DNA of 59,851 nucleotides, filler included, from Bipalium vagum (GCA_037834085.1; 3 parts of 3 records of this genome joined end to end with filler, not necessarily neighbours in it); one strand, 5' to 3'; counted from the first letter of the whole stretch, positions 1 to 26,966 are shown. Notes: generated from the sequence alone by a model not told the origin. Translations and numbers: made by a program.

Positions 1-408
1 TTGATGAGGGCTTCGACATCGCTTGAATCAGTCTCATTTGGACGCCCGGAGCGAGAGACATCATTTAAATTGAAATCACCACTTCTGAATTTGGCAAAAC
101 ACTTTTGGCATACGCGTTTTGGTAAGGCATCAACTCCATACACTTTGCATAATTTTGTATGTACCGCCGCGGCTTCCTTACCTTTATGAAAATAATATAA
201 TATTTATATAAATAATATATAACTTACCTTTCTTAAAATAATATAGCAAGATATAGCGAAAATGCATATTGTTATCATCCATATTGTAAATTCAATTTCC
301 GCTAACAAGATTTAATTATTAAAACAATAATTGAAATAAGATATTTTTAATGTATTAGTTTGAAAAATTTTTATATTAAAAAGCGCACGAACTTAGTTGC
401 CAACCCAA
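1..408 (-). mobile_element. mariner element 5' end (TIR plus transposase N-terminus interrupted by a 46-nt intron-like segment); runs off the window start
   Basis: TIR ttgggttggcaactaagttcgtgcgctttt on - (379-408) next to TA. ATG at 282; joining 228-282 to 1-181 gives MDDNNMHFRYILLYYFKKGKEAAAVHTKLCKVYGVDALPKRVCQKCFAKFRSGDFNLNDVSRSGRP, a typical mariner HTH region. Confidence 0.92.
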
Positions 409-736
409 TATATGTAAAAGTAAAATATATTCATGTCTTGAATGCCTGTGATTTACTATCAAATTTATGATAATAATAATAAATTTATAAGGTAATTGAA
501 TGAATTTTTTATCTGGCTTGTTAATATATTATTTTTTAATATTTAATATATTTTGAAATTAAATTAATCGTGATCTATCTTAAATACTGAAGTGTACTTT
601 TACATTCAGCCGTGTATTATTGGATAATAAAATATTTCGATCACTCACTTTAATTTATCAAGGTTTTTATTATTGTTTTCATTATCATTATCATTATTGT
701 TATTATTGTTTTCCTGTGTTTTTCGATATGTTACAC

Positions 737-4552: not shown

Positions 4553-4574
4553 TAATAATAATAATAATAATAAC

Positions 4575-4628: not shown

Positions 4629-4629
<1 letters not shown>

Positions 4630-4957: not shown

Positions 4958-5367
4958 TCAGTCCTGAGAAATCAAAGGATTAGAAGTCATCGATCTAGAG
5001 CTCACTTCTTCAAAGTTGTCCCAATTGACGGAATTGATTTCGACAGCTTTTATCCAACTGATGTCAAGCAGGTCGATTTTAGTACAAGATGATGGTGTAG
5101 GTACTTTTTCTTCGATTGTCAAACCGGAAAACTGAGCCTGGGGTCCTTTGAAAGGGTCTATTTTTTCTGTCAGCCCTTCCAGTTCCTGCTCCACATGTTG
5201 ATAGAACTGGTTGTGTTGATATTGTTCGAGTCTGGACTTTACTTGTTGTTGATGATGAGGGCCATGGTTAATGAACTCATTACTGACACTGTCTATAAGC
5301 ACTATTGATTGTGTTGGGGAATATTTGCTAGGATTACTGATTGACAGTTCTGTTTCTGACACATTTG
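4958..5367 (-). CDS. unknown gene, exon 3 (last coding exon in this model)
   Basis: cgttag acceptor in phase 1 matches exon 2. Long open frame TNVSETELSISNPSKY...PLISQD then TGA; higher GC than flanks. Confidence 0.7.
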
Positions 5368-5599
5368 CTAACGATCAAAGATAAACAAAGGGTTCAATAT
5401 AAATTTTCAATTGAAAATGCTGATCTCAATTTTTAAAATTTACTGATAGGCGTCTGATTTATTTATTTTGATTTGCGCAATTTTATTTTTTTTAAGGTAA
5501 TATTTTCCAAATATTGTTTAAATAATACTATCGTGTTTTCATACAATAATTTTGAATAGTAAAATAATTTTGCAGGTTAAATTATAATATTTTGCACCA

Positions 5600-6929
5600 T
5601 TTTATGTCTAGTACTTAGATGGCCAATACTATTGACATAACGTAGAACAGTTACAATGAAACAGAAAGACAAATTATCAAATAATTCAATGACGGATTTG
5701 GAGTAGCAGAAATATATGAGATGTCAAATTACAGTCACACAACTGTTGACAGTATCTGTAAAAGAGATAAATCCGCAATAAAATGGCCTTAAAAATATAT
5801 GTACGTTAAAGCAAAAGGATGACACTAAAGTCCGTCCGAAAATTATAATTAAAATGGAGCCAATATGAATGATTTTGATACAAGATTTGAATATAAAGGG
5901 TTTACCATTAAGCAAAGAAAATATTTGGATATTTATAATTCCTTAAGGCAGTCTGATGAGAATCATTCATTTAATGTTGTGTAAATGTTGGTTCAAGAAT
6001 TTAAAAAACTGAAATCAATTACGTGATCTACGTATGAATGGTGAAATGGCAAGAGCTGATAGAAAAGGAACTACAGATTTTGTAAGGAAATTCTAATGGA
6101 AGTTAATGAAATATATTCGTTGTCACAACTAATAAATATGGAAGAGTGTGATTTGTTTTGGAAAAATGACATCAAAAACGGTTTATTGAAAAATCAGGAG
6201 AAACACCACCAAGTCACAAGGCTTCAAAAGAATGATTGACTTTTTTTTAAGAGGCAATTCAAGTGTTAATTTAAAATTGAACCCACTTTAATATATACAC
6301 ACGATAACCTGAGAGCTTTAAAAATGTTAATATAGATAAACTTCGTGTTTATTGGAGAGCAAATAAAAATGCATGAATGGTAAACGCAATATTTTTTGAT
6401 TGGGTGAAAAAAGCCTACTTAAGCAATTAAAGATTTATTCTGAAAAGTACAGCATTCATTTCTCATTTTTAGTTTTACTTGATAATGCACCACGACATTC
6501 AAAACTAGAATCTCTAAATTCTTTATTTGATAGCATTAAGTTTCAGTTTCTCTCATCAAACACAACCTCCATTATGCAACCTATGGATCAGAGTGTGATA
6601 GCAACATTTAACGTTACTACCAAAAAAACCATATCAATCAATTTTAAACCAAAATGTTGATGTGGAAGCACTTAAGTTACTGGTTAAAAATATTCAATCG
6701 TAAATCCAATTAATAATATAGTTCTTTTTAATGTAAGCATGAACCGTCATTGTTACTTCTTCATTGATATTATTGATTACGTTTAAAGGTTTAGTCAAAA
6801 TAAAAATATACTAATATATCCTTATTTGTCATTGTTTAAAAGACTGGAACCCCGTTTTGTATTATTCTCTAATCTTTATTTGTGTAACTTTTTTGGAACG
6901 TATCTCTTACAAAAATCGAGTTCCCCCTG
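5600..6929 (+). mobile_element. degenerate pogo/Tigger element
   Basis: DDE_1-type motifs VLLDNAPRH and FLSSNTTSIMQPMDQSVIATF; CENP-B-like N-terminal remnants; right end cgagttccccctg-TA. Left end approximate. Confidence 0.88.
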
Positions 6930-6997
6930 TACATATATTTGAAAGGATTAATATTGTTTTATAAAATAATTTCAGTTTGAATAGAATAATAACTTAC

Positions 6998-7795: not shown

Positions 7796-8560
7796 TCGGT
7801 TGTTCAAAATAAAACGGTTTTTAAAAAGCGGTTTATTATCAATCGATAAAAATGTCCACCGTTCAATATTTATTATATGAGTTCTTTTTTTTCGAATCAT
7901 TCTCGTCTTTAAAATTCTGCGAAATCTAAGCTATGGTATAGTATCTCCCCTATTTTTTCCGAAATGTACTTCTTAGACACATTTCCTCAGCTCAGATTTG
8001 GTTTGGGTTGAATCTTCCACCAGTAATGATTTCAAATCTTTATCTTCAAATAATTTTGAAGATCCCAGGGTGAATTGCTTCTTGATGTAGGTCCAAAGAG
8101 TTGTGGTTCGCCATGTTAGTGGTTGCTGAAAAAAAATTGTTACCTTCCATAATAATTTATTTATTCAAACCGTTTTTCTGTTTTGTTCAATTTGCTATTA
8201 AAACAAATGAAATTTTAATACTTTTCACATATAAAATTTTCGCATTTAATTCGAATATATTGAGCTTTAAAATTTATACTTGTTTTTATTAAAAATTTAA
8301 TTTATACTTTTATTTAATTATTAAAATCTTTTAGCTCAATATACTGCAAATTAAATTAAAAAATTAAATATGTTAATCAGATATTTTTAGATTCTCACAG
8401 TAAGCCTTCCGATATCTTTGCCTTTGGTATCGTAATTGCACTTTTCAAATCAACAAAACCAATCATAACTTGTCATAATGACAACATTCTTACAACCAAT
8501 TGTTAAAGTATGCAGACATTTTTGAATTGATGTATTATTTAAACAACGATTTAATAAATA
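7796..8560 (-). mobile_element. mariner fragments
   Basis: TIR-like ttcggttgttcaaaataaaacggt; on -, YDWFC*FEKCNYDTKGKDIGR resembles WF.RFKSGNFDLED..RSGRP. Confidence 0.6.
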
Positions 8561-9369: not shown

Positions 9370-9589
9370 ATCTAAGTTTTTCGGAATTTGGTTAAAAATA
9401 TTATCTTATTTGGAAGAAAGTATTTTAATGAGGACACAAAAACAATATAAATAATATACAATCCCTCATTTTAAATTTCATATAAAGTTAGGTATAATAT
9501 ATATTCACTATCATTAACGACAGTCATCTGACAAATTTCCATCGAAAACTAGATACCATCAGCAAAAGTTTTATCCTACTCTTCATATA

Positions 9590-10257
9590 CAGGGTAGCTC
9601 AAAAGTAACTTAATGATTTTAAATAATATTAAAATGTAAATATTCCAGACAATTATTTATTTTGAATATTACATCAGATCAGTCCATAAGTTCGTGCGTA
9701 TTAATAAATATTATATAAATATAAAAATAAAAAGCAAATCGAAATCGATATGAAACATTTATTCATGGAAATAATTACCATTGTTTTCTACAATCTTTTT
9801 CCACCTGTCAGGAAGTTTTTTAAAACCATCTGCATAAAATGACAAAGGTTTGAAGAATCAAAGATATAATGCAATACCCACGAATTTATGGACTGACCTG
9901 ATACATAAACAATAATTCACAGAGGTCTTTATTTCTGGTTTGCTACGGTCTTCCCAATCTTTACAAATCGTTTACGGAGCCCTGACCTCGGAAACGTTTA
10001 ATTAATTGCATAATCATAAAGGCTGTTGGTGGCTTCTTAACATTGAAATGTTGGCAATATTTCCGTTGAGTTCGGATTATTGAATTATTTTTTTGAAACT
10101 AAAATTCCACGATTTTCGTTCGTTCAGATATTGTATATCTTTGTGACATTAATTTCTTGGAATCCTTCTTATATCTACAATTATTTCAAAATAAATAAAT
10201 ATTGATTTTATTTTTTATGAATTTTTAAAATCATTAAGTTACTTTTGCGCCACTCTG
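9590..10257 (-). mobile_element. non-autonomous Tc1/mariner element with a nested mariner deletion derivative (9674-9901)
   Basis: Outer TIRs cagggtagctcaaaagtaacttaatgattttaaa / tttaaaatcattaagttacttttgcgccactctg with TA flanks. Inner TIRs tcagatcagtccataagttcgtg / cacgaatttatggactgacctga. Confidence 0.85.
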
Positions 10258-10699
10258 TATAAAATATACAGTTAAATAAAACAATTTTTAAAATAAAACT
10301 GGGTTTTTATTGAAAGCATTTTATCAAGGTTGTTTTTTATTAGTTTTATCAAAAATTTCTTCAAACGTATATCTTTCTCTTTCTTTTTTTTAGAATTTAA
10401 AATATTTCTTCTTAAATTTATATTGGTTTATTTTTTGAAAGTTTTTATTTTTATATTATATTATTAATTTTTATCACACAAAAGTGTATTCTATTCTTAA
10501 TTTCCTTTCAGAATTTTTTAAAGAATATTTAAAAAGTTGGTTACAGATAAAACATATATTGTGCTTTCTTATTTTCTGTAATTTATTTTCATTTAGTTCA
10601 CAATAAATAATAAATAATAAATAATAGATAATAATAAGATTACCTAGTGAAAAGAAGTTTCAAAATTCTACTAGGTTTTATGAAAAGTTATTCTTAATA

Positions 10700-11590: not shown

Positions 11591-11738
11591 TTTAATACAA
11601 TATTTTCCAGTATAGTTTGATTTTATGTGGCTTTTGAAATAGTTAGGAAAATTTGAAATTATTTATTTTTATTAAATGTGAATAATTTTTTTATTAATAA
11701 ATAATAATATTTTATCTAATCAACGTGTCAATTTTTAG

Positions 11739-11987
11739 CAATATGTGATATTAAAGGGGCAATATATGATGGAAGTAAATTTCTTAATAGTAATTTGTCC
11801 AGAATGTAACGAGATTGCGAAAATTGAAAACCTTTTCTCAAACGTATATAGCCATATTAACACATATGAAACTTTTCTGGGTAATCTTATAAGCACCAGA
11901 TGTGCAGGCATGATAATTGATCAAAGTGACAAATTCATTTTGGCTTGGAATAAGATTAATGAAGACATACAAAATATTTTTATGAAG
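11739..11987 (+). CDS. NIT-domain guanylyl cyclase, exon 4 (second half of NIT domain)
   Basis: tttttag acceptor, 249-nt phase 0-0 exon QYVILKGQYMME...AWNKINEDIQNIFMK, AAG|gtaaaa donor. Confidence 0.8.
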
Positions 11988-12314
11988 GTAAAAAAATTAA
12001 ACTTTTAACATAAATGTCTTTATTTATATTTCATTGATAATAATAGATTTATTGGAAAAACTTTAATATTTTAGTGATTTTTTGTTTTGCCACTTATTAT
12101 AATTATTGATTATTGTATTTCTTAACTAATTAAACTTTTTTACATATGTATTATAAAATATAGAATGAATAATAATTATTATAATTATATAATTATACAG
12201 TTTATTTAATAATAAACATTTTAACTTGAGATATATCAGAAATTCTACGGTAATGGTATTATGAATTAACCAGATAAATGGTGAAAGGTTATCGAAAATA
12301 GTTGTTTGTTTCTA

Positions 12315-12863
12315 TAGTGCGCCACAAATTAATTGCCGCACCTTGTAAAATCAAGAAATCTTCATTATTTTCAAACTGTAATTAATTTTTCATAAAATTG
12401 ATGAAAGTACAAGATATAAGAACTTATTTGAACAGCATTGTATTATTTAAATTAAGTTGTAATTTAAGCCTGTTGGTTCGGAAGGTATATGATGGTGGAA
12501 AGCTGTTGGGAAGACATGGATCAATAAATCCTGGAAAATTTAGTAATTTCAATGCCAAATAGAATTTATGAGACTATTTATGCTCACGGCAGCTCAATAA
12601 ACTATAAGAAAATTATTGGTACATTTTTGTGAATAAAAATCGACTTTTTGGAAATTGCGGCAATTAATTCGTGTCGGTTTTTTCTTGATATTTTTATTTT
12701 TTGCTTAATATAGTTGGTTATATTAAGAATTTTTCAATTATTTTTTTACATTTGCATTAAGACACTAATAGCTACATTGTGCAAATATTTTGAAAATTTT
12801 GAAATCTTTGGACAAAAGATAATGTCCTTTTTGTAAATGCGACAATTAATTTGTGGCGTACTG
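12315..12863 (+). mobile_element. Tc1-like deletion derivative in cyclase intron
   Basis: TIRs tagtgcgccacaaattaattgccgca / tgcgacaattaatttgtggcgtactg with TA flanks; internal SMPNRIYETIYAHG Tc1 C-terminus. Confidence 0.85.
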
Positions 12864-13115
12864 TACTTCAAAACGTCAGAAATTGCTTAGACCATGTAAA
12901 ATATTGAATAACAAAATTACTTTTGTAAGTCTAAAGTTTATAAAAGGTCTGGTATTTTGATTATTCCATTTTATCTTCTCAAAATAACAGCTCAATTTCA
13001 AAAATTATATTTTCAATGTCTTTTAAAGGATGAATATGTTTGACAGAATAATTAAAAATAATTGGTAAACATAAAATTTTATATATTTTGGAATTAATTT
13101 AATTTACGAATGTAG

Positions 13116-13328
13116 CTCAAGAATATAACAGAAACACAAAGTTTAAAGAATTTGGAGAATCTATTGTGGAATGACAAAACAAAGTTACTGTTATTTGGAT
13201 TTGCTATATTAACTTTCGGAATCTGTAGCTATTTTGTCTTACGGTCTTACTGGTGTTCAATCAAGATTTTCGAAAATAATATCTATAAATTTTCAGAGCA
13301 CTTTAAAATAAAATCCCTGGAACTAGAA
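13116..13328 (+). CDS. NIT-domain guanylyl cyclase, exon 5 (second TM helix, start of coiled coil)
   Basis: tgtag acceptor, 213 nt phase 0-0, TM LLLFGFAILTFGICSYFVL then KIKSLELE|gtaata. Confidence 0.85.
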
Positions 13329-14460
13329 GTAATATAAATTATTTTTTAAAAAACTTTGTATTATCTTTAATATGAAACATAAATATATATATATTTTGTG
13401 CTCGTTGAAAACGAGTCTTTTTAATTGCTTTAATAATAACCTTACGAACTCAAATTTTAAAAAGAGATATCTAGATGAAATTTTGCTTGTCCACCAGAAA
13501 AATAGGGTACTTTTTTTGAATGGTAGATCTACTTAACAATATCAGCTAATTAAGTTTCATTTTTTGAATGAATAAAATTTCTTGAATGCACTGCTTTATT
13601 ATGATATGTTAACCTTAACATTTATTAAGTCAAAAGTAATGATTTAATAATTTTTTTATCAACCAATTAAGTGTCATACTATTTCATATATTCAAAATTT
13701 TTAAGGATTTTGAAAACCATAAGTGTGCTAAAAATTACTTTGAAGGGCTTCTAATTACAAAGAAAGTTTCTAAAGTCTAATGTACCATAAATATATAATA
13801 TGATGAGGCTAATCAGACCTGGTGAAATTTTTTATTATTTTTCAAATATTTAAAAAGTATGAATGAAATTTTAAAAATAAACTTATTTTTAAAATTTAAT
13901 AAAAAAAGGAATTTCCAGGTCTGAGAAAATTTTTAAAATATTATTTGTTTTGTTACTTAATAAATCTATTCAAAAAACTGACTTGTATTTCTGATTATAA
14001 ACCGATTGATATTAACATATAATATTCGTTCAATGCCACAGACTAAGAGAAAATTATGCGAAACGAACTATCCGAAGAAAATATAAAAATTATTATTTGA
14101 ATTATATCCAAATTTATTTAAAATTATGATTAAAATAAAAATAATAAAACAAAAAAATAAGATTTCATCTATGGACTCTAGACGCCTTTATTCAAGTGCC
14201 TAATATCAATATCCTTTTCCTTAGACAAATAAACACAATATTAATAAATCTTTTTTTCTTATTTAAAAAATTTTGATTATAATTTTGAATTTACAGAGAG
14301 AACGACAGGGATTTTTTGCAATTTTTGATTTATGATCATACACAATTCATGTGAAAATAAGTTAAAATGGAGAGATGACATTTTTTATTAAATTCAATTC
14401 AAATTAATTTACATAAATACTTTTATTAAAAAAATTATTATTATTTTATTCAAAAATAAG

Positions 14461-14660
14461 AACGAAAAGAACAAAACTGATAATATTATAAATTCAATAT
14501 TTCCGAAAAATATTTTCGAGCAAATGAGGGCTGGCAAGGATGTGATAGCTCAACATTACGAATGCGTTACGGTTTACTTTTCTGATATTGTTTCATTTAC
14601 AACGATTGCATCTAAACTAAACCCATTGGAGGTTATCGAAATGCTCAGTGACTTGTATAC
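14461..14660 (+). CDS. guanylyl cyclase, exon 6 (signalling helix, first catalytic Asp)
   Basis: NEKNKTDNIINSIFPKNIFEQM...VTVYFSDIVSFTTIAS..PLEVIEMLSDLYT; gtatga donor. Confidence 0.93.
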
Positions 14661-14705
14661 GTATGATTTAATATTTGTTGTTTCTCAATTATATGAGCTG
14701 ATCAG

Positions 14706-14815
14706 AACATTTGATAACTGTTTAAATAAATATGATGTCTACAAAATCGAGACCATCGGAGATGCCTATTTAGTTGTGAGCGGACTTCCAGTTCAAAATG
14801 GAATATCACATGCTG
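14706..14815 (+). CDS. guanylyl cyclase, exon 7
   Basis: TFDNCLNKYDVYKIETIGDAYLVVSGLP, the class III cyclase signature with the guanine-selecting Glu; GT-AG boundaries. Confidence 0.95.
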
Positions 14816-14858
14816 GTAAAGATTTCAAATTGAAGATAGTTTATTTATTTATTTTCAG

Positions 14859-14963
14859 AAGAAATTTGTAATCTAAGTTTATCTGTTAGAGACGTGATGA
14901 AGGAATTTAGTCACAAAAAAATTACAAAAAATACTTTAAAATTGCGAATTGGTATTCATTCAG
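14859..14963 (+). CDS. guanylyl cyclase, exon 8
   Basis: ttttcag acceptor; EICNLSLSVRDVMKEF...LKLRIGIHSG; phase 1-1. Confidence 0.93.
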
Positions 14964-15129
14964 GTCGATATTCATTATACTTTTATATTATTATTAGTAG
15001 TAGTTTTCATTATTTTTTCTGTTCTATTTATAAATCAGACTTACAATGCCATTACTGCATTATTTGACGATTATCATATATCATATTTCTTTTTTGATCA
15101 TAAAATATTTTTTGATGAGGTTAACCATT

Positions 15130-15960
15130 CATTAATTAGTTTGAATAAATATAAAACTCATTGAGCATTTGGAAATTTATTTATATTATAAAGCTGTTTT
15201 AATAAAGTAATTTGATGTATTAAAATTGATTTAATTTTTGAAATAATACATCTTTAGAAAATGATTGATCAAAGATATAGAGTGCTGGTTTCAAGCAAAT
15301 TAAACCAGACGATGAGTCACATCGTAATTCATGTCAAGCATTCGGAGATGAAGTTCCAGTATTACGTCAATGTCAGCGATGGTTTCGGCGTTTCAAAGAT
15401 GATGATGAACGTCCTGAAGACGAAAAACATCAACGTAATCAGCAAGTTGTGGACAACGAAGAATTAAAAGAAAACATTAAGTTGGATTCCTGCCAAACTA
15501 TTCGTGAGCGTGCAGAAAATTTTGGTTGCACTCAGTACTATAGAAATCTTCCTAGATGCAATCGGAAAATTAAACAGAAACTGAAAATGAGTTCTGCAAT
15601 CTCAAGACATAGCGGGTGAACAATGCCCGAATTCTTCTTCGCGAAACTATGAACAGCGGATTCCTTAACTATTTTGAAATGTCAGATGAAAAATGGATGT
15701 CATAAAATAATACAAGAAAACGACAGTGGATAACCGTTGGAGAACAACAAAAATCGACTTCAAAGCTAAATAATCGTGGATTCAAGGTCATATTGTTTGT
15801 ATGATGAATGGCAAAGATTCTGTATATTTCGAAATGCCTGTTAATGGTCAGCGGAGAATACAGGCCTATACACATAACAAATCAGCTGTGTGGACCAATC
15901 TTTGCACCTTCAAATGAAAGGCATTTTTGCTTCGGTTCTACAATCATATCTGTCTGAAAA
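15130..15960 (+). mobile_element. degenerate mariner in cyclase intron
   Basis: AFGDEVPVLRQCQRWFRRFKDDDERPED, MSDEKWMS and KVILFV*W-like remnants. Confidence 0.85.
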
Positions 15961-16429
15961 GATGCGGAGATAAAACATTCAAAGGAAGAATCCACAAGCA
16001 ATTTTGTATTTAATTAATATTAAGTTTATAAAAATTTTTGTTGATGCCTGAAATTTAAATTTTATTTTATCATCATTTTTCTTATTTGACCATCATCTCT
16101 AACATGATCTTTTTATTTTGATCACGATTGTCAAGAAAAAAATAATCTTTAAAACTTCATAATAAGGACATGTTTGTTGAAAATTAGTTTTTAAAAAAAT
16201 GTATTCCATTAAATAATTTAATGAATAGTTATCCATGAAAAATTGTCAATCTTTCTTGCACGGATGTAAAACCTGAGGTTGTCATCTTTAATTTTAATTG
16301 TAAACACAAAAGGTATATATTGAAAATATTGGATGACAAGAATCTGAAATGTAAATACATAAGTGAACAAATATTAAAATGAACATTTATGTTTACATTT
16401 GTAACTGAGATGCTCTAAGTAATGTTAAA

Positions 16430-17190
16430 GTAAATACAATTCGGTTCAATTCAAGATACAATTTAATATTACTTTTTCGGAAATCAAAAACAGCACGTGA
16501 TCTTTTTAACGATTGGAAATCAAGCTAAACTTTCTCAATTAGTACTGTGAAGCGCAATCTGAGAAGGTATGGCTTGTTCAGACAAATTTCAGCGAACAAA
16601 CCTTATTTAAATAAGCGACATATCAAGAATCGCTTAAAGTGATGCAGAGATTATAGCAAACTGCTTCCTTCTTTTTGGAATGAGGTGATTTTTACAGATT
16701 AAAACCGGACAGAACTGTTCTCTAAAAGAAGAGAATATGTCCGCAGACCACAAGGATTCGGGTATAATCCAAAATATACTACAAAAAATGTTAAATTTAG
16801 AGAAAATAGTTTGATGGTTTATGGCGCAATCGAAGAAGATGACATCAGAGTTTTCATAAGGTGTCTGGATTGGATGAATTCTGATGCCTACTAGGATGTA
16901 TTGAAGAAAGGGTTTTTCTAAAAGACAGAACTCCATGCTATATGTCAAGATTTGTGACTTCATTTTTGGAAAAGTCCAAGTTATACGTACTGTGTGATTG
17001 ACCGACTCAATCACTAGATCTGAAAGCCAGAGTTGCTATGTGTAGGCCGGCAAATATTGAGGTACTGTTGAGGATTTCGGAGGAGTAGTGGGCGATGATT
17101 CCACCATCTAAGTTTAAAAATCTTTATGAAAGCATACCAAGCAGGTTCAAGAGGTAAGTTAAAAAAAGGTATGAATACAAGATATTAATT
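16430..17190 (+). mobile_element. degenerate Tc1-like transposase in cyclase intron
   Basis: STVKRNLRRYGLF..ANKPYLNKRHIKNRL, LMVYGAI and LYESIPSR remnants with frameshifts. Confidence 0.85.
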
Positions 17191-17740
17191 TCGATTATCT
17201 TAATTTTTTATGAGGTTGACTGTTTCTTAAAATGTGTTTGGTCATTTAAAATGTAAATAACAGATGCTTTACTGATGTTTTAGTCTTTTATTCAAAATGA
17301 CTTAAAAATAATGTTTTTGTAAAAACGGTTTTTCTAAATTTACAAAATAATAATAGATAATGTACTTCAACCCTCCAAACACCCGTGAGAAAAGGCTCTA
17401 CACAAGCAACTGATTGGACCAAAAGTGTGTGATCTACCATACGTAGCTAAAATAAGTTACCGGGGACGTGTACCGAGAACAATTATCACGCCTGAGCCAG
17501 ACATTGAGCGAAAAAAGACCAGACTATGAAAAAAAGCAGCATTAAGTGATACTACATTAATTTCTTGTCAATCTAATAAATTATGTATTATTTCTTTATT
17601 AATTATTAACACATCATATTTCTTTCCACTAGCGATTCAAACAATTCTGATTTAATCGATTTATTAAATGACAATGACAAATGACAAAAATAATGTTTTT
17701 TTATTATTTAAGCCAGTAAATTAAAATAATATTATTCTAG

Positions 17741-17839
17741 GAAAATGTGTTGCAGGGGTTGTAGGAAGAAAAAGTCCAAAATATTGTTTATTTGGAGAAA
17801 CAATTAGAATTGTTGAACTTTTAGAGTCCACAAGTGAAG
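17741..17839 (+). CDS. guanylyl cyclase, exon 9
   Basis: GKCVAGVVGRKSPKYCLFGETIRIVELLESTSE; ttctag acceptor and gtaagt donor. Confidence 0.95.
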
Positions 17840-18737
17840 GTAAGTATTCTTAAGCACTATTAGTATATACAAAACTAGTATGTTCAAAAACAAGTTTTAG
17901 ATGTTTGTCTCGGCTTTGGCTTCGACGTTTTTGCAAATATTATAGCTCTTGATTATCATCTTCACTGCATATTTTTCCATGATTGTTTTAATTTCTGCTA
18001 TTTTAAAATCTAATTTCCCGAGTGTTGGTAGTTTGACGGAATCAACGATGCTCTGGCTCCGATTATAAATGTTCTGCTCTCATAGCACCATGTTCTTCCG
18101 AGTTAAGATTCATCTTCTTCCAGTAAAATCTGAAATGTTTGTTTATTTTGCTCCGTCATTACCTATGATAGAGACCACTAATTCAAAGAGGAATTTGACG
18201 TCAATAATAAGGTTTTTTAAGTTTCTTGTTAACTAATCGTGTATCAGAAATTAGGTTTTGACATGAAAAGAAATTATGTCGTCATTTCATATTCATTATC
18301 AAATTATTAATAATTTTATTATAAATAATTTTCTATTCTTTTTCTGGTAAATTTTCCGAAAAATTATTTCATTTTCCTAGAACCAATCAAAAAAGCTTTT
18401 TATTGTTAAAAAAAACTTCAATCAACAATATACTATCTCTTTTGATTCAGCACCTGTCACATATAAAATATTTATAAGATTAAATTTTGTGGACTTATCC
18501 ATTTTTGAAAAATTAGGATCCAATGAATATGGATATCTTCATTTGAATCAATCATCCTGCAATTCAAAGAATGTTGCAATAAATTGAAAATAAGTAAAAA
18601 TCAGACGAAGCGGGTGTAGTATCAAATCTCATTTAATAGCCAATATAGGTCTTACTTGAAGTCATAAACCTAAAAATAAGTCTCAATAGTATTTAACAAG
18701 TACTGTTTTAAGTTAATATGATTTTATAATTATATAG

Positions 18738-18829
18738 AAATGAAAATCCAAACGAGTTATACTACAGTAAATCTGGTGAAGCATAGAAAATTATTCGACT
18801 TCACTTATCGTGGGGATGTATCTATACCG
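18738..18829 (+). CDS. guanylyl cyclase, exon 10
   Basis: MKIQTSYTTVNLV..FDFTYRGDVSIP; tatag acceptor and gtaagt donor; phase 1-0. Confidence 0.9.
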
Positions 18830-19904
18830 GTAAGTATATATAATAATTTATTCATTAAGTTATTATTATTATTTATTAATTATGAATTGCATTTTCTGAA
18901 GTTCAATTTTGATCACATGATTGTAACCGTCTTTATCTTACATTTTCAAAAAACATGTTACACTTCAGAACAGGTACGGAAATAACTTTTTTGGTTAATT
19001 ACAGGGTTGCAGAAACCTAAGGAAAATTTTATTTATTATGTTTTTTTGAAGAATAAAAATTTTTAACGAATGTAATTTTAAACTGTTATCTTATTTTGAG
19101 ACATTTTTAGTTAATTTTAAATATTGAGATGCATAGAAATTTAAAAAGTCATACAATAATCCATTATTGACATCTTCCGAGTCAAGAATTTTTGAATTTC
19201 TCAACATTCCTTTCAAAATCTTTCCTTCTTTATCTTAAAATAATTATCTTATACCACGGGTATTTCTATTGACTATGTATGGACCCACGTATCTTTCCTG
19301 TCCTTAGAGTGATCTACATTCCAAAGTTTGAAAACCCCTGTGAATCCACCACGATGTCATGAATGGTGGAACGGCTAAATTTCACTCTGGTAACAATGTG
19401 CTTGTGAGACATTTTGCTTTTGATGAGGAGATTGGTGTTTTTGATTTGATGTTTTGGTTTTCGCTTCTCCTTGAATAATAATATATAAAAACCATATGTA
19501 TTTATTTTAAAATGTCGAACTTTGAAAGTTATGTTGCTTTTTAAAAATTTGGTTTAAAATAATATGATTCAATCAATAATAAGACTTTATATATCTAATT
19601 TGACACTTTTTATTATATTTAGAGAAAAATAACTGTCCGGATGGTATTCACTTGTACCTTAATAAAAATTTTATTCTTGTCTTTTTTGTTGAAAATTGTT
19701 CTATTTAGTAGATGAAAGATTCTTATATAATGTATCAAAATCTGTAGTTGATAGGATTTTTTAGCAGCTATTAGACTTTAATTGCAACAATGTAAAACAT
19801 CCGGACAGATTTTTGATCATACAGTAATGTTCAATTTTATCATCTTCATAAAACTAAAAAATTATCTTTTCTAAATTTAAAGTAGTTATACATATGAGAT
19901 ATTA

Positions 19905-20584
19905 CAGATTTTTTCATTTAATTTAGACAAAACAATTATTAATCTTGTTTAGCAAGACTTATATTTGAGATAATATTTATAGATGAAGTTGGTTTTAACG
20001 TTTCGATGCGATCAAGGGAGAGATGGTCTTTGAAGGGTTCACCGGCAGTACTAAATGTCCCAGGATTAAGATCAAGAAACATCTCCTAAAGCTGTGCAAT
20101 AAATGTTGATGGACTATTATACTTTGAAAATCAAGTCAAAGTCCATAATACAGAAAGTTATATATCTTTTCTTGATAACCCCCATGTGAAGCTACAAATT
20201 TGTGGTGTTGTTAAGGCAGGTTTTGTCATGGATAATTTTTCATTTCACCGTTCTTGACTTATTGTCGCAAAAATACGAGAACTTGGGTATCGATGTGTTT
20301 ATCTACCTTATTCTCCCTTTCTAAACCCGATTGAGGAGATGTTTGCAAATTGGAAAGAATTGGCTCAAAGATCAGCTCCTACAAATTCATTTGATTTAAT
20401 AAAATTGATTGAAGATATATCAATCAATATATATATGATTGTTTAGGTTTTTATAAACATATGATAAAATATTTGTAAAGATGTGAAGGAAAAGAATTGA
20501 TCATGGATTAAAAAAATTTCGAAATAAATGTTGTTATTTGTCTAAATTTAATGAACATTTGAATAAATTAAATGAAAAACCCTG
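19905..20584 (+). mobile_element. IS630-like Tc1/mariner (DDxE) deletion derivative
   Basis: IFIDEVGFN...VMDNFSFH...YLPYSPFLNPIEEMFANWK with stops; TIRs cagattttttcatttaattta / taaattaaatgaaaaaccctg. Confidence 0.88.
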
Positions 20585-20691
20585 CAAGTTAATAAATATT
20601 TAAGAGATTTACCAATTATAAATTTAGTAATTATTTAATAAATAAAACATGTTAAATAAAAGAATTTTATAATGAAAATATTATATTTTAG

Positions 20692-20742
20692 GATAAAGGA
20701 TCCATTAGGACTTATTGGCTGGAAGGAAAAATGCACACTTGA
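20692..20742 (+). CDS. guanylyl cyclase, terminal exon 11
   Basis: ttttag acceptor; DKGSIRTYWLEGKMHT*, matching KGKG.M.TYWL. Confidence 0.92.
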   Translation, partial: DKGSIRTYWLEGKMHT

Positions 20743-20969
20743 ATGATTATATTTTTATTTAATAATATATTTATTTATTATATTTAAAATGACAAAACCT
20801 GTATAATCAAACTCTATACTTTGTCTTGATATTGTTATATTTAACCATAATAATATAACTAATAGGCCTCCGATTCCAATGTTGTGATTTACCTAAGAGA
20901 TTTTTATTCTATTAATTAATTTTTATTTTTTATTTTTAATTAAATTTTATTCTATAAATATCAAAAGTT

Positions 20970-21026
20970 TTAACGATAGCACTTAACGATAGCACTTAAC
21001 GATAGCACTTAACGATAGCACTTAAC
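20970..21026. repeat. 13-bp tandem repeat (ttaacgatagcac) x4.4
   Basis: Four perfect copies plus ttaac. Confidence 0.95.
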
Positions 21027-21482
21027 ATTATTATTAATAAAATGACGTCATTATATATCTTAACTTTTTATTAATAAAATTAAAAATAAGGATTGAAAAA
21101 TCAGTTGTGACCTCAAGATAACATATATAAATGTAAGGCTAATTAACTTTGAGTCTATAATCCTCGGTAAAGCAGAAGACAATTATTAATTTCTACAAAC
21201 TTAAAAATGTTTGAAATGATTTCATTATCAAAATTCACAGTTTTGTACTTAATCTTAAGCATAGAGACAATTATCTTTACGAAATAACCTTCCAATGTTT
21301 TAGCTTCAATCCTCTGCTCGTCATCATTTGATAATATTTTTCTTTTCTTCCTTGTTTCCTTTTTAATTTTTTCACTAGAGAATTGATCATATTTCAAGTA
21401 TAAAAAATTATAAATTAAAAAAGACTTGTATAGCGTCCTCTTCTTAAACCTTCAACGTGTCACTTTTTATTCACAGATAGTA

Positions 21483-22446
21483 ACGGGTGTTCACTTGAAA
21501 TTTGAAATAGTTGAAAATTTACATTTGATTACAAATGCTTTGTAGAATTTAGTGGTTACGTTTTAGTTATATTGATAAATAAGCATCGATTTATTATAAT
21601 ACACTTTCTAGACATTTCTCTTGGCTACGTTAATAAAATTTTGAAAGAAGAGGGCATCTCAGCCTATCAGAAGCAAAAGAAGTCTCATACAACTGAGAAG
21701 CAAATTGTGTCTCAGAAGCTGCGGATCTGTCGCCTCTATGCAAAGGTTTTATCAATGGGTGACGGAAACCCCAGTTTTCTTGTTGATGATGAGAGTTACT
21801 TTACTCTATCTCATCACAGTATAGCTGTTAACCAGTATTATTATTCAACATCAAGAAACAAAGCTAGCGGTGATGTGAAGTTTTATTCACACATTAAATT
21901 TGAGCCGAAAGTTCTGGTTTGGATTTCTATGAGTGATGCTGGAATTTCGCAACCATTCATTTGTCATTCAAATCTTGCTGTCAATAAAAAAATTTATTCT
22001 CAGAAATGCGTTCGCCAGCGCCTTTTTCCATTTCTGGACGCCAACTACATATTTTTCATAATTGCTACATTTGAAGATCTTAAAATCAATTTTGCACCAA
22101 AGAATATGAATCCTCCATGCTTATCGCACTTGCGATCCATTGAAGACTTTTGATCTATCCTAAGATATAAAGTTTACCAACACAATTGGCAAGCAAAAGA
22201 TCTGGATCAACTCAAAAGAAGGATTAAATACTGTTTGAAAAAGTTAGATTTCACTGCTGTACGTGCCATGATGAGAGATATGAAAGTTAAGTTGAGAAAG
22301 GCTAGAGCCAATGGTGCTGATTCTTTACTTCATTGACATTTTCTAATTCTCTGATGTCTACTGTTTAATTTGTGTTGAAATAAATTTTTTGTAACTCGAT
22401 TATTTAACTTTTATAACATCATTCCAAATTTAAAGTAAACACCTGT
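21483..22446 (+). mobile_element. Tc1-like element (TRT/DD37E-like), internally deleted
   Basis: TIRs acgggtgttcacttgaaatttg / caaatttaaagtaaacacctgt with TA flanks; VDDESYF, KFEPKVLVW, NPPCLSHLRSIEDF. Confidence 0.88.
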
Positions 22447-22559
22447 TATACTATTAGTAGTTCCTTTTGGTAAGAAGAATGTATTTACTAATTCTTTCAA
22501 TGTTTTCCCATCAGTGTAATTTCCAATTATCAGTTTCCTGATATTACCAGTTATCTTAT

Positions 22560-23358
22560 TTCTCTTAACAAACTGCCATTTTTTTGCATTATCATAATAA
22601 TTATCAGACTAATTTTCATCATACCATTATGCTATTATATCAAGCGATTAGTTTTAGTGAGTCTTTAGGATCAAAAGGATGAATTAAATGATTTTTTATA
22701 TTTTTCCCGTACCTATCACACAGTAGGCAGTTGCCGACTTATCGAACATAAGGTATAAAGACATAAACTTTTACTAGTCAAGTTTTCAAAGCAGTGTTTG
22801 TCAGCACCATCCCAGGTGTACTATTAGATATTAATGGTGATCATAATTTTCTCAACCGTTTTGATAGATACATTTGTTTCTATTTTGAATTATGGTGCTC
22901 TGGTTGACATGTAACCTTCTTGTCAATTCTACAGTCGATTGAGTATAATCCTCTTTCAAAAGTGCTTTCAAGTCATCCAAACTCATTTCATATAGCTGCC
23001 CAATACGTTCTTTATCGTTCAAATCAAAATCATGGATTTGAAGCATCGAAACCGTTTACGACATAAGCTCTCAGCTCCTGCTCAATCATAATATGTATTG
23101 TAAATAATCCGAGTTGCTTCGGCTGATGTTTTGCTCTGATTAAACAAAAACAATATACAGTGGCATAATTGCATTTTATCTACTTCCATTATAAGTTCTG
23201 CAAATGAATTGGTAAACTTAAATTAATTATCAGATTAATGATATAAATATAATCAATATTGACTTAAACAAAATACAAATTTTAGCTATATTATTATTAA
23301 TATTACTTAAATTCCACATATATGTAAATCAGCGATGTGAACTTGTGTATATGCCTAA
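22560..23358 (-). mobile_element. degenerate mariner
   Basis: MEVDKMQLCHCILFLFNQSKTSAEA..DFDLNDKERIG..QSTVEL; TIR-like end near 23330-23358. Left end approximate. Confidence 0.82.
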
Positions 23359-23972
23359 CAAATAAAACTTGACTCTTTTAAATCATGCAGTCATCTATTT
23401 AGAAATTGACTTACATTAATAAGATGATTTAAAATATGAATTTGGAAATTTGCCACTTATTATTAAATAATTAAAGTAACCTTATGAAAGGCAAAACTGA
23501 ATGATTTTATAAAAAATATTTTAAATCTAAATGTTATCTGTATTATGTTATATAATGAACTCAAATCACAGCTTGTAAACTTTTTAAACGATAACATTTA
23601 GAACTATTTTGTAAAGAACATTTTTTGAATGAAAGATGACATAAGATCATTAGCAAAAATGGCCAATACTTTACTGAATAAAATTGTTTATTCTTTATAA
23701 AATTATCTTTATCTTTGTCCAAAAATACGCAATTACCTAGCTACCTATCCATTATTTTAATTAAATAGAAATATATTAATAATTATTTTATAAATATATA
23801 TAATTTATTTAAATATAGTTTATTACTTAGATTCTATTATGAAATTGAAAAAATAATATTAATCCATTTAGAATAAAAAAACGTTTAAAAATTGATAATT
23901 GAATAATAAATTTCGCGATGTGATTGGCTTCGGTTACGTTTAAAAGTGAGAGTTAAAGAAAAAATATAAAAA

Positions 23973-24246
23973 ATGAAGTTCAATAAAAACAATAAAGTTT
24001 TTAGTGAAGCAACTCTGAGAAATAGTTCTAATTTGTCTTACTTTTGGACAACGAATAAAAATGATATTGATCCGGAAATAAAGACATTATTAGACCAAAG
24101 TCGATCAAGCCATATTATTGAATTTTTGAAATGTTTTTTTGTGGCCCTGATACCGTTAGTCATAACAATTGCTTTCATAACAGTATTTACAACGAAAAGC
24201 TTTGAAAAGATCCATGGCTCGTACCAGTCGACATGTCAAATTAATC
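23973..24246 (+). CDS. NIT-domain guanylyl cyclase, exon 1 (N-tail plus first TM helix)
   Basis: aaaaATG; TM FFVALIPLVITIAFITVF; C|gtgagt donor in phase 1; ATTGG (CCAAT) box at 23923. Confidence 0.85.
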
Positions 24247-24641
24247 GTGAGTTCAAAAAATAAATAATTATTCATAAAAAAATAATATTGATTTTTAAAT
24301 TTTTTAGGAAAAATTATATTTTTAAAAAAATCATTTAATTTTTCCTTGTTATATCTAAAATTTGTATAATTTCTTGATAATTATTATTTTAAGAAAAGAT
24401 TACATTAAAAGATTACGAATTTCTAAAAAATATGAATGAATTAGTTAAATTTAAATAAATGTTAAATATTATTATGATTTTTAAAATGTTAAATCTCACT
24501 AATAATACATCTCTGACATGAAGTATTAGTGAAGTATATTTTATTTTATTTTATTAACATCTTTTTCCATTTCTACATTTCTTGTTATAAATTAACGATT
24601 TATTATGTTTTTCTTAATTATATTTATTTTATTCCTTACAG

Positions 24642-24897
24642 AGGCCATGGAGATAATTGCAGCTGTCCAAGCTCTTCAGGTGGAAAGAGGTTTGTCTACT
24701 CAATTTATAGCATCAAATCGATCAATTGATTCTCAAAGTATGCTAACTTCCCGGAATGACACTAACCTAAAATTTACATTAATAAAAAAATGGATCAATG
24801 AATCATATTTTACTAATTTTTACAATCTAACTGTTATACGTGCGTCAACGGATTTAATAAATATTTTGAATAGGTATAGAAATCAAATTGATGACAA
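24642..24897 (+). CDS. NIT-domain guanylyl cyclase, exon 2 (NIT domain start)
   Basis: ttacag acceptor; AAVQALQVERGLS matches the NIT motif LVH.LQ.ERG.S; LNRYRNQIDD. Confidence 0.9.
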
Positions 24898-24954
24898 GTA
24901 CTTTACGTTAAAAAGAAATCAGAGAAATAAATAAATGTTTTAATTTATTTTTAG

Positions 24955-25177
24955 AAATTTCAATCTTTCCATTATTAATAATATCAATTATTACACCACC
25001 CTTCATGAAAGTTTTATAAACTTCATATCTGATATGGATTTGGGAGATTATTTTAAGAACTGGCAGTACTTAATTGGACTCAGTAATCTTGTAATGATCA
25101 CAGATACCCTTGGTATCCAAAGAGCTTTAGGTAGCGCATTATTTATGAATTGTGATCTTATTTCTGACCTGAAATCT
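24955..25177 (+). CDS. NIT-domain guanylyl cyclase, exon 3
   Basis: INYYTTLHESF...DTLGIQRALGSALF (second NIT G.ERA.G motif); TCT|gtaagt donor in phase 0. Confidence 0.9.
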
Positions 25178-26002
25178 GTAAGTTCTTTTCATTAAAATAA
25201 TTTATTAATTAAATTTTTATTAATAAAAGTTAAAAGTGCTTATGTTATAACTGAAAATTTTACGTATACTTTTATTAATAATTATTTATATCTTTATATT
25301 TTTATAAATATGAATAGACTTTGTGGGTGTTGTATAAAACCAAAATTTAACACGATTACAAGAAGTTTCTAGACATATAATCCCAAGAAAAAATCCCCTC
25401 GGAATAAAATACCTGAAGTATAAAAATACCATTCATAGTGAAAGGAGATTCATTGTTAGACCTTATATCTTCATATGTTCACATGGAAGTATAAGTATTT
25501 AAATTTAAAATTAAATTGATAATAGTGTTAAGTTCCTAAAAGTGACTGAATTTAGGTTACAAATAACGATAATGGTCTTTTAGGTATATATAAGCGTATA
25601 TGACTATCAGAAGGATTTATGAAGTGTAATTCGGAACCGTAAATAAAAAAGGATAAATGAAAACAAATCGAATCGAATACAAATATTTTTATTTGCAAAA
25701 ATGTGATTTTACAAGGGGGGTTTAAATGAGAATCATTAAATCCTTTCAAAGTTATCCTGTAACATGTGGAAAAGCCCTGAGATGATTTACCAACTCTAAC
25801 TGTTGTGTAAATCACAAACCAAAAGAAAAGTATGGAGAATGTAAAAACAAAAAATGAAGGTAATACTATTCAACAGTGATTACCGGAAAATTGTGGATTT
25901 TAAGATAATTTAAAATGGTCTGTGCAAACTATAATAATTTACTAAATGTAATAAATAATGAGTTAAATAATAATAATGAAAAATATTAATAATAATAATA
26001 AT

Positions 26003-26035
<33 letters not shown>

Positions 26036-26893
26036 TAATAGAATTTACTGCTTGCAAGGACATATAATATTTGTGGCTAAAGGAATTAGAATTTTGTAGT
26101 TGAAGTTTGAAATTGGAAATGTTGACTGAGGTTCAGTATTAGATTGTTGTCTCAGAATTCGTCTCTGGATTTGCATTTGAATTTATCTTTGAATTTATCT
26201 GTCTTTGAATTCGTCTGTCAATTTTGTCTGCGAAGGTTTTGTATCACTTGGTCTTAAATAGTTTTGTTTCGAATTGTTGACAGGAACTGAATTGTTATTG
26301 TCGTCACAGCTGATGATTGTATTGTTTTTGTACCAAATTTTATTTTTATGTTTTTGATTTCAAGCTGACCTTTTATATTGTATTTTCTAAGTTTATTCCT
26401 ATTTTTGTATTTCAAATTTTTCCTTTTTTAGTTTTTTGGGTATAAATTATTTTCATATTTATATTTGTATCACATTTTTTGCTAGATTTTTATTTTTAGA
26501 AACCTAGTCTTTTCTATTTTTAATTTTATATATAATTGTTTGTTTTCTATATATTTTCTTTAATTAGTAATTATTAATAGTAATAATAATAATAATAATT
26601 GTTGTCTCAATTTTATTCTTTTTTAGAGATTCTCATTTTTTACAATTGAACAAAGATAAAATTACTTTTAATACTTTTATTAAAATCAAATCAAAATCAA
26701 AAATTGTCACGATTAAATTTTTTTTTATTGTCAAATTTTTTAATTTCTCTTGAGTCTCCACAATAGAACAAATGAAGTCACGAATCATCTTAACGTACCA
26801 TAAAACTAAGTCCCTATTTTTAGTTAGTATTATATATTAGACTATTTCACGCAAAATGAGGAATGATGACCTTCAAATCATTAGTATCAATAT

Positions 26894-26966
26894 ACAGTCG
26901 GCGCTCAGTTATTTGAACGCTTAGTTATTTGAACTTTCAGTTATTTGAATAATTTTTTGAAAAATT
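26894..26966 (+). mobile_element. pogo/Tigger-type terminus cut by contig end
   Basis: TA-cagtcggcgctcagttatttgaac with three subterminal agttatttgaa repeats. Confidence 0.6.

What the first reader, a model, noticed from the sequence alone, without database searches (positions are those of the whole stretch)
11739..25177. NIT-guanylyl cyclase exons in permuted order: exons 4-11 precede exons 1-3
Seen: within one ungapped contig, 8 exons from mid-NIT domain to stop (11739-20742) are followed on the same strand by 3 exons from ATG to mid-NIT domain (23973-25177). The block ending ..GIQRALGSALFMNCDLISDLKS ends in phase 0, and the upstream block starts in phase 0 (QYVILKGQY..) where the NIT domain should continue. 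Joined, they give a non-overlapping ~623-aa TM-NIT-TM-coiled coil-cyclase. I saw no exon 1-3 copy in 1-11738, which holds an antisense gene and TEs. Inference: the plainest explanation is two tandem paralogs, one with a >11.7-kb intron 3 hosting a nested gene and one cut by the contig end at 26966. Alternatives are a collapsed tandem duplication, or a truly permuted locus needing trans-splicing between two transcripts.
Basis: partly seen in the sequence, partly recalled or inferred. Interest (0 to 1): 0.85.

Follow-up and report, generated by a model that had tools for sequence, protein, structure and literature searches.

The report
Neighbouring NIT-guanylyl cyclase genes, not permuted
The swapped exon order is really in the contig, but it is most likely the tail of one NIT-domain guanylyl cyclase gene followed by the head of the next gene in a head-to-tail family cluster, on a very fragmented assembly, so it is probably ordinary.

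Summary
Eight exons (11739-20742, mid-NIT domain to stop) are followed on the same strand by three exons (23973-25177, ATG to mid-NIT domain). All have GT-AG borders and matching phases, giving 372 + 251 = 623 codons.

The tandem-neighbour reading is the best one.
- The phase-0 intron between exons 3 and 4 sits at the same place in the paralogs examined at that boundary. Any member's exon 3 therefore fits any member's exon 4.
- One paralog contig (C57098) has the normal order, exon 3 then 4 then 5.
- Another contig (C27016) repeats the window's layout: cyclase last exon and stop, 3.9 kb, then ATG exon 1-3 of a different member, then a mariner and the contig end.
- Both ends of the window contig stop in high-copy repeats.
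- The 11.7 kb upstream is largely transposon debris.
- K-mer depth over exons 1-3 is single-copy, which argues against a collapsed duplication.

Not settled: the upstream gene's exons 1-3 and the downstream gene's exons 4 onward were not located, and no RNA run exists. A real permuted or broken locus (about 10-15%) and an assembly error (about 10%) remain possible.

Side finding: this subfamily's cyclase domain lacks the catalytic Asn/Arg pair.

The parts
1..440 (-). End of a young, high-copy mariner-type element; the left end of the contig
   Evidence: HTH_48 match at 3-203(-). 91-96% identical to dozens of other contigs.
4961..5374 (-).
   Evidence: No Pfam hit, only itself in the genome, no homolog in the protein collection.
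5453..6931 (+). Old pogo-type transposon remnant
   Evidence: DDE_1 match at 6400-6657. About 80% identical copies on many contigs.
8054..8403 (.). Short high-copy repeat
   Evidence: 92-95% identical copies on many contigs.
9586..10267 (-). Repeat with inverted ends carrying a DUF4817 helix-turn-helix
   Evidence: DUF4817 at 9964-10098(-). Inverted repeat 9586-9666 / 10185-10261. 92-94% identical copies elsewhere.
11739..11987 (+). Gene A exon 4: second half of the NIT domain, phase 0 to phase 0
   Evidence: tttttAG acceptor and AAG|GTAAAA donor. Aligns end to end with exon 4 of C57098 and C258225.
13116..13328 (+). Gene A exon 5: second membrane span and juxtamembrane helix
   Evidence: 58% identical over 73 residues to exon 5 of C57098 and C206953, with the same borders.
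14461..14963 (+). Gene A cyclase core: three exons (14461-14660, 14706-14815, 14859-14963) split by 45-nt and 43-nt introns
   Evidence: PF00211. Alignment to ANP receptor 1 with a gap over the 45-nt intron. 96.4% DNA identity to C197736 and 85.9% to C226258.
15281..17400 (+). Mariner/Tc-type transposon debris inside the cycC-cycD intron
   Evidence: HTH_48 at 15281-15616 and HTH_Tnp_Tc3_2 at 16529-16639. Similar debris lies in intron 3 of C57098.
17741..17839 (+). Gene A cyclase exon D, with FGETIRIVELLES in place of FGDTVNTASRMES
   Evidence: PF00211. Alignments to solved guanylyl cyclases. Paralogs compared.
18738..18829 (+). Gene A cyclase exon E
   Evidence: Borders read. Paralog copies on C29990 and C202958, and a partial copy at the end of C27016.
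19943..20443 (+). Tc1-type transposase remnant in the last intron
   Evidence: DDE_3 matches.
20692..20742 (+). Gene A last exon and TGA stop
   Evidence: Homologous last exons on C27016, C247756, C180596 and C202958.
21477..23361 (.). Spacer between the genes, holding two diverged transposon remnants (21477-22457 and 22887-23361)
   Evidence: 81-91% identical to other copies. Single-copy-depth unitigs with no differences cover 21498-21640 and 22389-23140.
23973..24246 (+). Gene B exon 1: ATG and first membrane span
   Evidence: No close copy in the genome.
24642..24897 (+). Gene B exon 2: NIT domain start
   Evidence: PF08376 profile positions 2-82. 39% identical to exon 2 on C27016.
24955..25177 (+). 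Gene B exon 3: NIT domain middle, ends in phase 0 at GTAAGT
   Evidence: PF08376 profile positions 83-144. Aligned with three paralog exon 3 sequences that end at the same place.
25178..26966 (+). Start of gene B intron 3, filled with repeats; the right end of the contig
   Evidence: Repeats at about 25555-25870 and 26050-26775. The last 77 bases are shared at 99-100% identity with dozens of contigs.

Best explanation
The contig covers the junction between two head-to-tail neighbours of a small NIT-domain guanylyl cyclase family.

Gene A contributes exons 4 to last (11739-20742). Its exons 1-3 would lie more than 11.7 kb upstream, beyond a transposon-bloated intron 3 and the contig's left end.

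Gene B starts 3.2 kb after A's stop and contributes exons 1-3 (23973-25177). Its exon 4 onward would lie beyond the repeat that ends the contig at 26966.

The two blocks look like complementary halves of one gene only because the family shares one exon plan, with a phase-0 intron at the same place in the NIT domain.

Shown: the exons, the shared exon plan, a second contig with the same layout, a paralog in the normal order, and repeat-bounded contig ends. Inferred: that A and B are different genes, each with an unseen other half.
For: 1. The intron-3 position and phase 0 are the same in C57098, C27016 and C258225. In each, exon 3 ends seven residues after a conserved Cys-containing pair (CD or DC), and exon 4 starts with E/Q-Y.

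2. C57098 carries exon 3, then 2.2 kb, exon 4, 0.5 kb and exon 5, in the normal order on one contig.

3. C27016 on its minus strand carries a cyclase exon E end and a last exon with stop. After 3.9 kb come an ATG exon 1 and exons 2-3 of a different member, then a mariner in intron 3 and the contig end. This is the same layout as the window. Its end overlaps C29990 by an exact 77 bases.

4. Both ends of the window contig enter high-copy repeats.

5. Repeats and transposon domains are spread along 1-11738, and other introns of this gene and its paralogs also hold transposons.

6. The unitig over exons 1-3 has depth 19.1. Spacer pieces have 16-28 and unrelated unitigs in the same run 10-27, so nothing is at double depth.

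7. The cyclase core of gene A differs from its closest paralog by about 12 synonymous and 4 replacement changes, by my count on the alignment. This suggests gene A is, or recently was, under selection and so should have a 5' part.

8. A divergent exon 5 exists on C230385 whose exons 3 and 4 the profiles did not find. Failure to detect partner exons is therefore weak evidence.
Against: - No exon 1-3 set attributable to gene A was found anywhere in the assembly, and no exon 4-5 set attributable to gene B. Profiles find only four copies of exon 3 and three of exon 4, the window's included.
- An intron 3 longer than 11.7 kb would be far longer than the 2.2 kb seen in C57098.
- The only sequencing run found is probably the assembly's own data and is held as contigs, so it gives no independent check of the join.
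- No RNA data are available.
Confidence: 0.68

Rival explanations
1. Real rearrangement without rescue. One gene, or a duplicated pair, was broken so that a 5'-truncated copy (exons 4 to last) and a 3'-truncated copy (exons 1-3) sit side by side. Neither makes a full-length cyclase. The open frames are still intact because the event is recent or because gene conversion from paralogs refreshes them.
For: - In this assembly exons 1-5 of this type occur once each, while the cyclase core to last exon have close second copies.
- Identity to the closest paralog is limited to exons and mini-introns and stops within about 25 bases of the outer exon borders. This fits gene conversion.
Against: - All eleven exons are open with canonical splice sites in a 26% GC genome, where stop codons arise easily by chance.
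- Exons 4 and 5 have no close donor copy for conversion, yet they are intact.
- Exact complementarity of two fragments needs a three-break event, or a duplication followed by two deletions.
Confidence: 0.1
2. Assembly artefact. One normal gene was circularly permuted by a wrong path through the transposon in the spacer, or through near-identical cyclase exons of a neighbour, or by collapse of a recent tandem duplication.
For: - The spacer holds a multi-copy transposon. For 21640-22389 and 23140-23293, no single-copy unitig was among the pieces listed.
- Paralog cyclase exons are up to 96% identical.
- The assembly is a k=77 graph assembly in 272,664 pieces.
Against: - The spacer transposon copies are only 81-91% identical to any other copy, so shared 77-mers should be rare.
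- Unitigs at single-copy depth with no differences cover most of the spacer, including the copy-specific internal deletion point near 21615.
- Differences from C197736 are spread over the whole cyclase core, so there is no sign of a switch to that copy.
- There is no double depth over exons 1-3, and the contig ends do not overlap each other.
- A normal gene would still need an intron 3 of at least 13.5 kb.
Confidence: 0.1
3. Truly permuted functional gene. Exons 1-3 and exons 4 to last are transcribed separately, and the exon 3 donor is trans-spliced to the exon 4 acceptor to make one 623-residue NIT-guanylyl cyclase.
For: - Exact phase-0 complementarity, and no other exon 1-5 of this type in the assembly.
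- No exon 1-3 within 11.7 kb upstream.
- Exon 4 has a good acceptor and needs some upstream donor.
Against: - Complementarity is a family property.
- A paralog has the normal order, and another contig shows the same layout with two clearly different members.
- There is no complementary sequence between 25178-26966 and 1-11738 that could pair the two transcripts.
- From general knowledge, such genes are extremely rare compared with tandem paralogs.
- There is no RNA evidence either way.
Confidence: 0.04

Closest known systems
Animal NIT-domain guanylyl cyclases (NIT-GCs: placozoan NIT-GCs; Platynereis NIT-GC1 and NIT-GC2)
   Same: Membrane span, NIT domain (PF08376), second membrane span, helix, and C-terminal cyclase domain (PF00211) related to the natriuretic-peptide-receptor type. 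Lineage-specific multi-gene families are described: 12 in Trichoplax, 15 in Platynereis (PMC7400543; bioRxiv 10.1101/2023.08.02.551600).
   Different: The NIT exons here are very divergent. Exon 2 found no real match among 1.84 billion representative proteins. The cyclase domain lacks the Asn and Arg of the FGDTVNTASRMES motif. Whether the two blocks are one protein is not shown.
Tandem arrays of receptor-type guanylyl cyclase genes (for example the gcy genes of C. elegans; from general knowledge)
   Same: Head-to-tail neighbours with one shared exon plan, divergent sensor halves and conserved cyclase halves.
   Different: Here only junction fragments of the array are visible, because the assembly breaks at transposons. 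The array order is not reconstructed.
Genes whose exons need trans-splicing (mosquito bursicon, Drosophila mod(mdg4) and lola, C. elegans eri-6/7; from general knowledge)
   Same: 5' exons do not lie upstream of 3' exons on the same transcription unit.
   Different: In those cases transcripts prove the join. Here there is no transcript evidence, and an ordinary explanation fits.

Membership tests
Animal NIT-guanylyl cyclase | NIT domain (PF08376) in the extracellular part | tested here: met
   Exon 2 matches profile positions 2-82 (E 1.5e-5) and exon 3 matches 83-144 (E 2.2e-4). The genome-wide scan gives 46.1 bits over 24662-25144, above the cut-off. The second half (exon 4) gets no Pfam hit but aligns with paralog exon 4.
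Animal NIT-guanylyl cyclase | C-terminal class III cyclase domain (PF00211) of the receptor guanylyl cyclase type | tested here: met
   PF00211 on four exon pieces. Best solved relatives are ANP receptor 1 and guanylyl cyclase C.
Animal NIT-guanylyl cyclase | Two membrane spans flanking the NIT domain | tested here: inconclusive
   Hydrophobic stretches in exon 1 and exon 5 were read by eye. No predictor was run.
Animal NIT-guanylyl cyclase | Full catalytic residue set in the cyclase domain | tested here: not met
   Both metal-binding Asp are present (FSDIV, IGDAY), as are the guanine-specifying Glu and Cys. The Asn and Arg of FGDTVNTASRMES are replaced, giving FGETIRIVELLES. Two paralogs share the change, while other cyclases of this genome are canonical.
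Animal NIT-guanylyl cyclase | All domains on one polypeptide | not testable with these tools
   No RNA run was found.
Head-to-tail tandem gene array | Another locus where a member's last exon is followed on the same strand by another member's exon 1 | tested here: met
   C27016.
Head-to-tail tandem gene array | Shared exon-intron plan, so that blocks of different members are splice-compatible | tested here: met
   Borders of exons 3, 4 and 5, of exon E (donor) and of the last exon (acceptor) are at the same places in the paralogs that carry them.
Head-to-tail tandem gene array | Each of the two neighbours has its own complete exon set | tested here: not met
   Gene A's exons 1-3 and gene B's exons 4-5 were not located in the assembly. 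Walking out of the contig is blocked by repeats.
Permuted gene joined by trans-splicing | Transcripts joining the downstream-encoded 5' exons to the upstream-encoded 3' exons | not testable with these tools
   No RNA run holds the locus.
Permuted gene joined by trans-splicing | Complementary intron halves that could pair the two precursors (as in some known cases) | tested here: not met
   Self-comparison shows only low-complexity direct matches between 25178-26966 and 1-11738.

The most novel reading that the evidence does not exclude
The locus is truly permuted in the genome. One functional NIT-guanylyl cyclase mRNA is made by trans-splicing a transcript of exons 1-3 (23973-25177) to a separate transcript starting upstream of exon 4 (11739). 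As far as I know, this would be the first such case for a receptor cyclase.
Probability: 0.04. Interest if true: 0.8.

Novelty: new member of a known kind. Interest (0 to 1): 0.2.

Why it matters
If the tandem reading is right, the finding is an annotation caution. In fragmented assemblies, gene families with a shared exon plan produce contigs that mimic exon permutation. Naive joining would then create chimeric gene models from two paralogs.

The locus still adds members to the recently described animal NIT-guanylyl cyclases. Two features may be worth following:
- The sensor halves are fast-diverging, while the cyclase halves are kept alike, apparently by gene conversion.
- The cyclase domain has lost the catalytic Asn/Arg pair but keeps the metal-binding and guanine-specifying residues. 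This suggests a non-catalytic subunit or one that depends on a heterodimer partner.

Tried and rejected
- Exon 2 against 1.84 billion representative proteins gave two spurious hits: a phage baseplate/hydrolase-like protein and a DUF5845-like protein.
- Exact look-up of ten window ORFs in the 15-billion-protein collection found none.
- The protein search with the antisense ORF found nothing.
- Two metagenome scans, with exon 4 and exon 5, found nothing.
- Sequencing runs: only one holder, kept as contigs, and no RNA. The single reads call covered 20600-26599, so depth over exons 4-5 was not measured.
- Walking the assembly graph by the 77-base contig overlaps failed. Both end 77-mers are shared by dozens of contigs.
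- Candidate 5' exons were examined and rejected. C182930 and C196653 (weak exon 1 hits) are unrelated ORFs. C78431 is spurious and lies next to an adenylate-kinase-like gene. C16265 is a degenerate exon 3 fragment. C22917 has a weak isolated exon-4-like match with no other family exon nearby.
- The DNA search for cyclase exons D and E was swamped by an intron repeat, so it was redone with protein queries.
- Spacer homology between the window and C27016 is limited to the last-exon region and exons 2-3. The rest is AT-rich noise.
All searches were exon by exon, by reference.
- The organism was not identified; names are withheld by the tools.


Full report
**What the window is.** Places 1-26966 are the whole contig C111138 of a 440.8-Mb assembly in 272,664 contigs, with about 26% G+C. 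Contig ends in this assembly overlap their graph neighbours by exactly 77 bases, so it is a k=77 de Bruijn graph assembly. The organism's name is withheld. Spliced genes, GT-AG introns as short as 43-57 nt, and mariner, pogo and Tc1 debris show that it is an animal.

I read the borders directly from the sequence.
- The 5' block is e1 23973-24246 (ATG, ends in phase 1), e2 24642-24897 and e3 24955-25177 (ends in phase 0 at GTAAGT).
- The 3' block is e4 11739-11987 (after tttttAG, phase 0 to 0), e5 13116-13328, cyclase exons 14461-14660, 14706-14815, 14859-14963, 17741-17839 and 18738-18829, and a last exon 20692-20742 ending in TGA.
- All phases chain. The blocks hold 251 and 372 codons, 623 in all.
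- Pfam NIT covers profile positions 2-82 in e2 and 83-144 in e3, and PF00211 covers the cyclase exons.
- An alignment to ANP receptor 1 leaves a 15-residue gap exactly over the 45-nt intron.
- The contig has no internal duplication.
- 1-11738 has no exon 1-3 homolog with any query tried.

**Why the two blocks look like halves of one gene.** The family shares one exon plan.
- In paralog C57098, exon 3 ends seven residues after a conserved Cys-Asp pair, followed by GTGAGT. Exon 4 starts E-Y-F-I, where the window has Q-Y-V-I. Exon 5 has the same two borders, and even the intron end before it is alike.
- C27016 (exon 3) and C258225 (exon 4) agree.
- The phase-0 fit between 25177 and 11739 is therefore expected for any two members. 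It is not evidence that the blocks belong together.

**The family is arranged head to tail, in the normal exon order.**
- C57098 carries exon 3, then 2.2 kb, exon 4, 0.5 kb and exon 5 on one strand.
- C27016, on its minus strand, begins with the end of a cyclase exon E (same donor place as in the window). It then has a last exon with the same acceptor place and a stop.
- After 3.9 kb come an ATG exon with a membrane span, then exons 2 and 3 of a clearly different member (35-39% identical to the window's).
- A mariner in intron 3 and the contig end follow.
- This is the window's layout a second time. In the window the distance from stop to next ATG is 3.2 kb.

**Why the contig stops where it does.**
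- The left 440 bases are a young mariner copy, 91-96% identical to dozens of others.
- The last 77 bases on the right are shared at 99-100% identity with dozens of contigs, and 242 candidates were seen.
- 25555-25870 and 26050-26775 are repeats too.
- The 11.7 kb upstream of exon 4 holds mariner, pogo (DDE_1) and DUF4817 elements and short high-copy repeats.
- It also holds one single-copy 138-codon antisense ORF without any homolog.
- Other introns of this gene and of its paralogs carry transposons as well.

**Is the contig itself sound?** The only run that holds the locus (X1) is kept as contigs and is probably the assembly's own data, so it is not independent.
- Its unitigs match with no differences. 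Depth is 19.1 over 23293-25555 (exons 1-3) and 16-28 for pieces inside the spacer.
- Unrelated unitigs of the same run have depth 10-27. Nothing is at double depth, which argues against a collapsed recent duplication.
- The spacer transposons are only 81-91% identical to any other copy. Shared 77-mers should therefore be rare.
- A unitig at single-copy depth covers the copy-specific deletion point near 21615.
- For 21640-22389 and 23140-23293, no single-copy unitig was among the pieces listed. A wrong path there cannot be fully excluded.

**What remains unexplained.** Exons 1-5 of the window's type occur once in the assembly.
- The best other matches are 25-39% identical for exons 2-4 and 58% for exon 5.
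- Profiles find only four copies of exon 3 and three of exon 4.
- By contrast, the 3' half has close relatives on small contigs. The cyclase core is 96.4% identical to C197736 and 85.9% to C226258. Exon D is 88% identical to C263578. Exon E has copies on C29990 and C202958. There are five last exons in all.
- Identity to C197736 covers the three core exons and the two mini-introns, then stops within about 25 bases of the outer borders.
- By my count on the alignment, about 12 changes are synonymous and 4 are replacements.
- I read this as gene conversion keeping the cyclase halves alike while the sensor halves diverge.
- So gene A's exons 1-3 and gene B's exons 4-5 were not found. This is weak evidence against two genes, for three reasons. 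A fifth last exon already requires a member whose 5' exons are unseen. A divergent exon 5 (C230385) exists whose exons 3 and 4 the profiles miss. Other members also lack exons in this assembly.

**Weighing.**
- Two neighbouring genes explain everything seen. The cost is one very long intron (over 11.7 kb, against 2.2 kb in C57098) and two unassembled or unrecognised exon groups.
- An assembly error would need the same long intron (at least 13.5 kb) plus a wrong path through diverged repeats.
- A real permutation needs no long intron. Without trans-splicing it leaves no working gene, although all eleven exons are open in a genome where stops arise easily. With trans-splicing it belongs to a very rare class.
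- No complementary sequence links the two would-be half introns.
- My odds are: tandem neighbours 0.68, broken or partial copies 0.10, assembly artefact 0.10, trans-spliced permuted gene 0.04, and the rest unassigned.

**Comparison with what is known.** The proteins belong to the animal NIT-guanylyl cyclases described in placozoans and many bilaterians (PMC7400543). They were shown in Platynereis to make cGMP in response to an NO donor in a NIT-dependent way (bioRxiv 10.1101/2023.08.02.551600). Both papers report multi-gene families.
- The members here have very divergent NIT exons.
- Their cyclase domain has FGETIRIVELLES where solved guanylyl cyclases, and three other cyclases of the same genome, have FGDTVNTASRMES. 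The catalytic Asn and Arg are lost.
- Both metal-binding Asp and the guanine-specifying Glu and Cys are kept. Two paralogs share the change.
- This suggests a non-catalytic subunit or a heterodimer-dependent one. That is an inference and was not tested.

All searches were exon by exon, by reference.

**Verdict.** The most likely meaning is ordinary tandem paralogs on a fragmented assembly, with a small residual chance of a truly permuted locus that only long reads and RNA can settle.

Noticed in passing
window 17741-17839; also C263578 (L021:66-191) and C202958 (L022:68-193): This NIT-cyclase subfamily has FGETIRIVELLES, FGQTIRIVELLES or FGETIKIKENLES where canonical guanylyl cyclases have FGDTVNTASRMES. 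Three other cyclases of the same genome are canonical. The catalytic Asn and Arg are lost, while the metal-binding Asp and guanine-specifying Glu and Cys are kept. This could mean a pseudo-cyclase or an obligate heterodimer subunit.
   Followed up: partly
window 14435-14988 vs C197736 (L013:508-1062): 96% DNA identity across three cyclase exons and their 43-45-nt introns, ending within about 25 bases of the outer exon borders. The changes are mostly synonymous. The same exon-limited pattern is seen between C57098 and C206953/C260258 (93-94%). This looks like gene conversion among family members.
   Followed up: partly
window 14661-14705, 14816-14858, 24898-24954: Very short introns of 45, 43 and 57 nt lie beside multi-kb, transposon-filled introns in the same gene.
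   Followed up: no
window 4961-5374 (-) and 4104-4403 (-): Open frames of 138 and 100 codons on the opposite strand. The first is single-copy in the genome with no Pfam hit and no homolog found. The second has no Pfam hit and was not searched further. Their nature is unknown.
   Followed up: partly
window 20600-20999: The run X1 unitig over the last exon and its 3' flank has depth 8.1, about half that of neighbouring unitigs (about 20). It may be a haplotype-specific stretch or a coverage dip in AT-rich sequence.
   Followed up: no
C57098 (L001:1-77) and C263578 (L021:506-582): An exact 77-base end overlap links the paralog contig downstream of its exon 5 to a contig carrying a cyclase exon D. 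Yet no cyclase core exons lie in the 4 kb in between. Either the graph link runs through a repeat or that paralog lacks its core.
   Followed up: no
L010 (C78431), locus 3844-4287, minus strand: An adenylate-kinase-like open frame (GGPGxGK motif) lies next to a spurious exon-3-like hit. It is unrelated to the finding.
   Followed up: no
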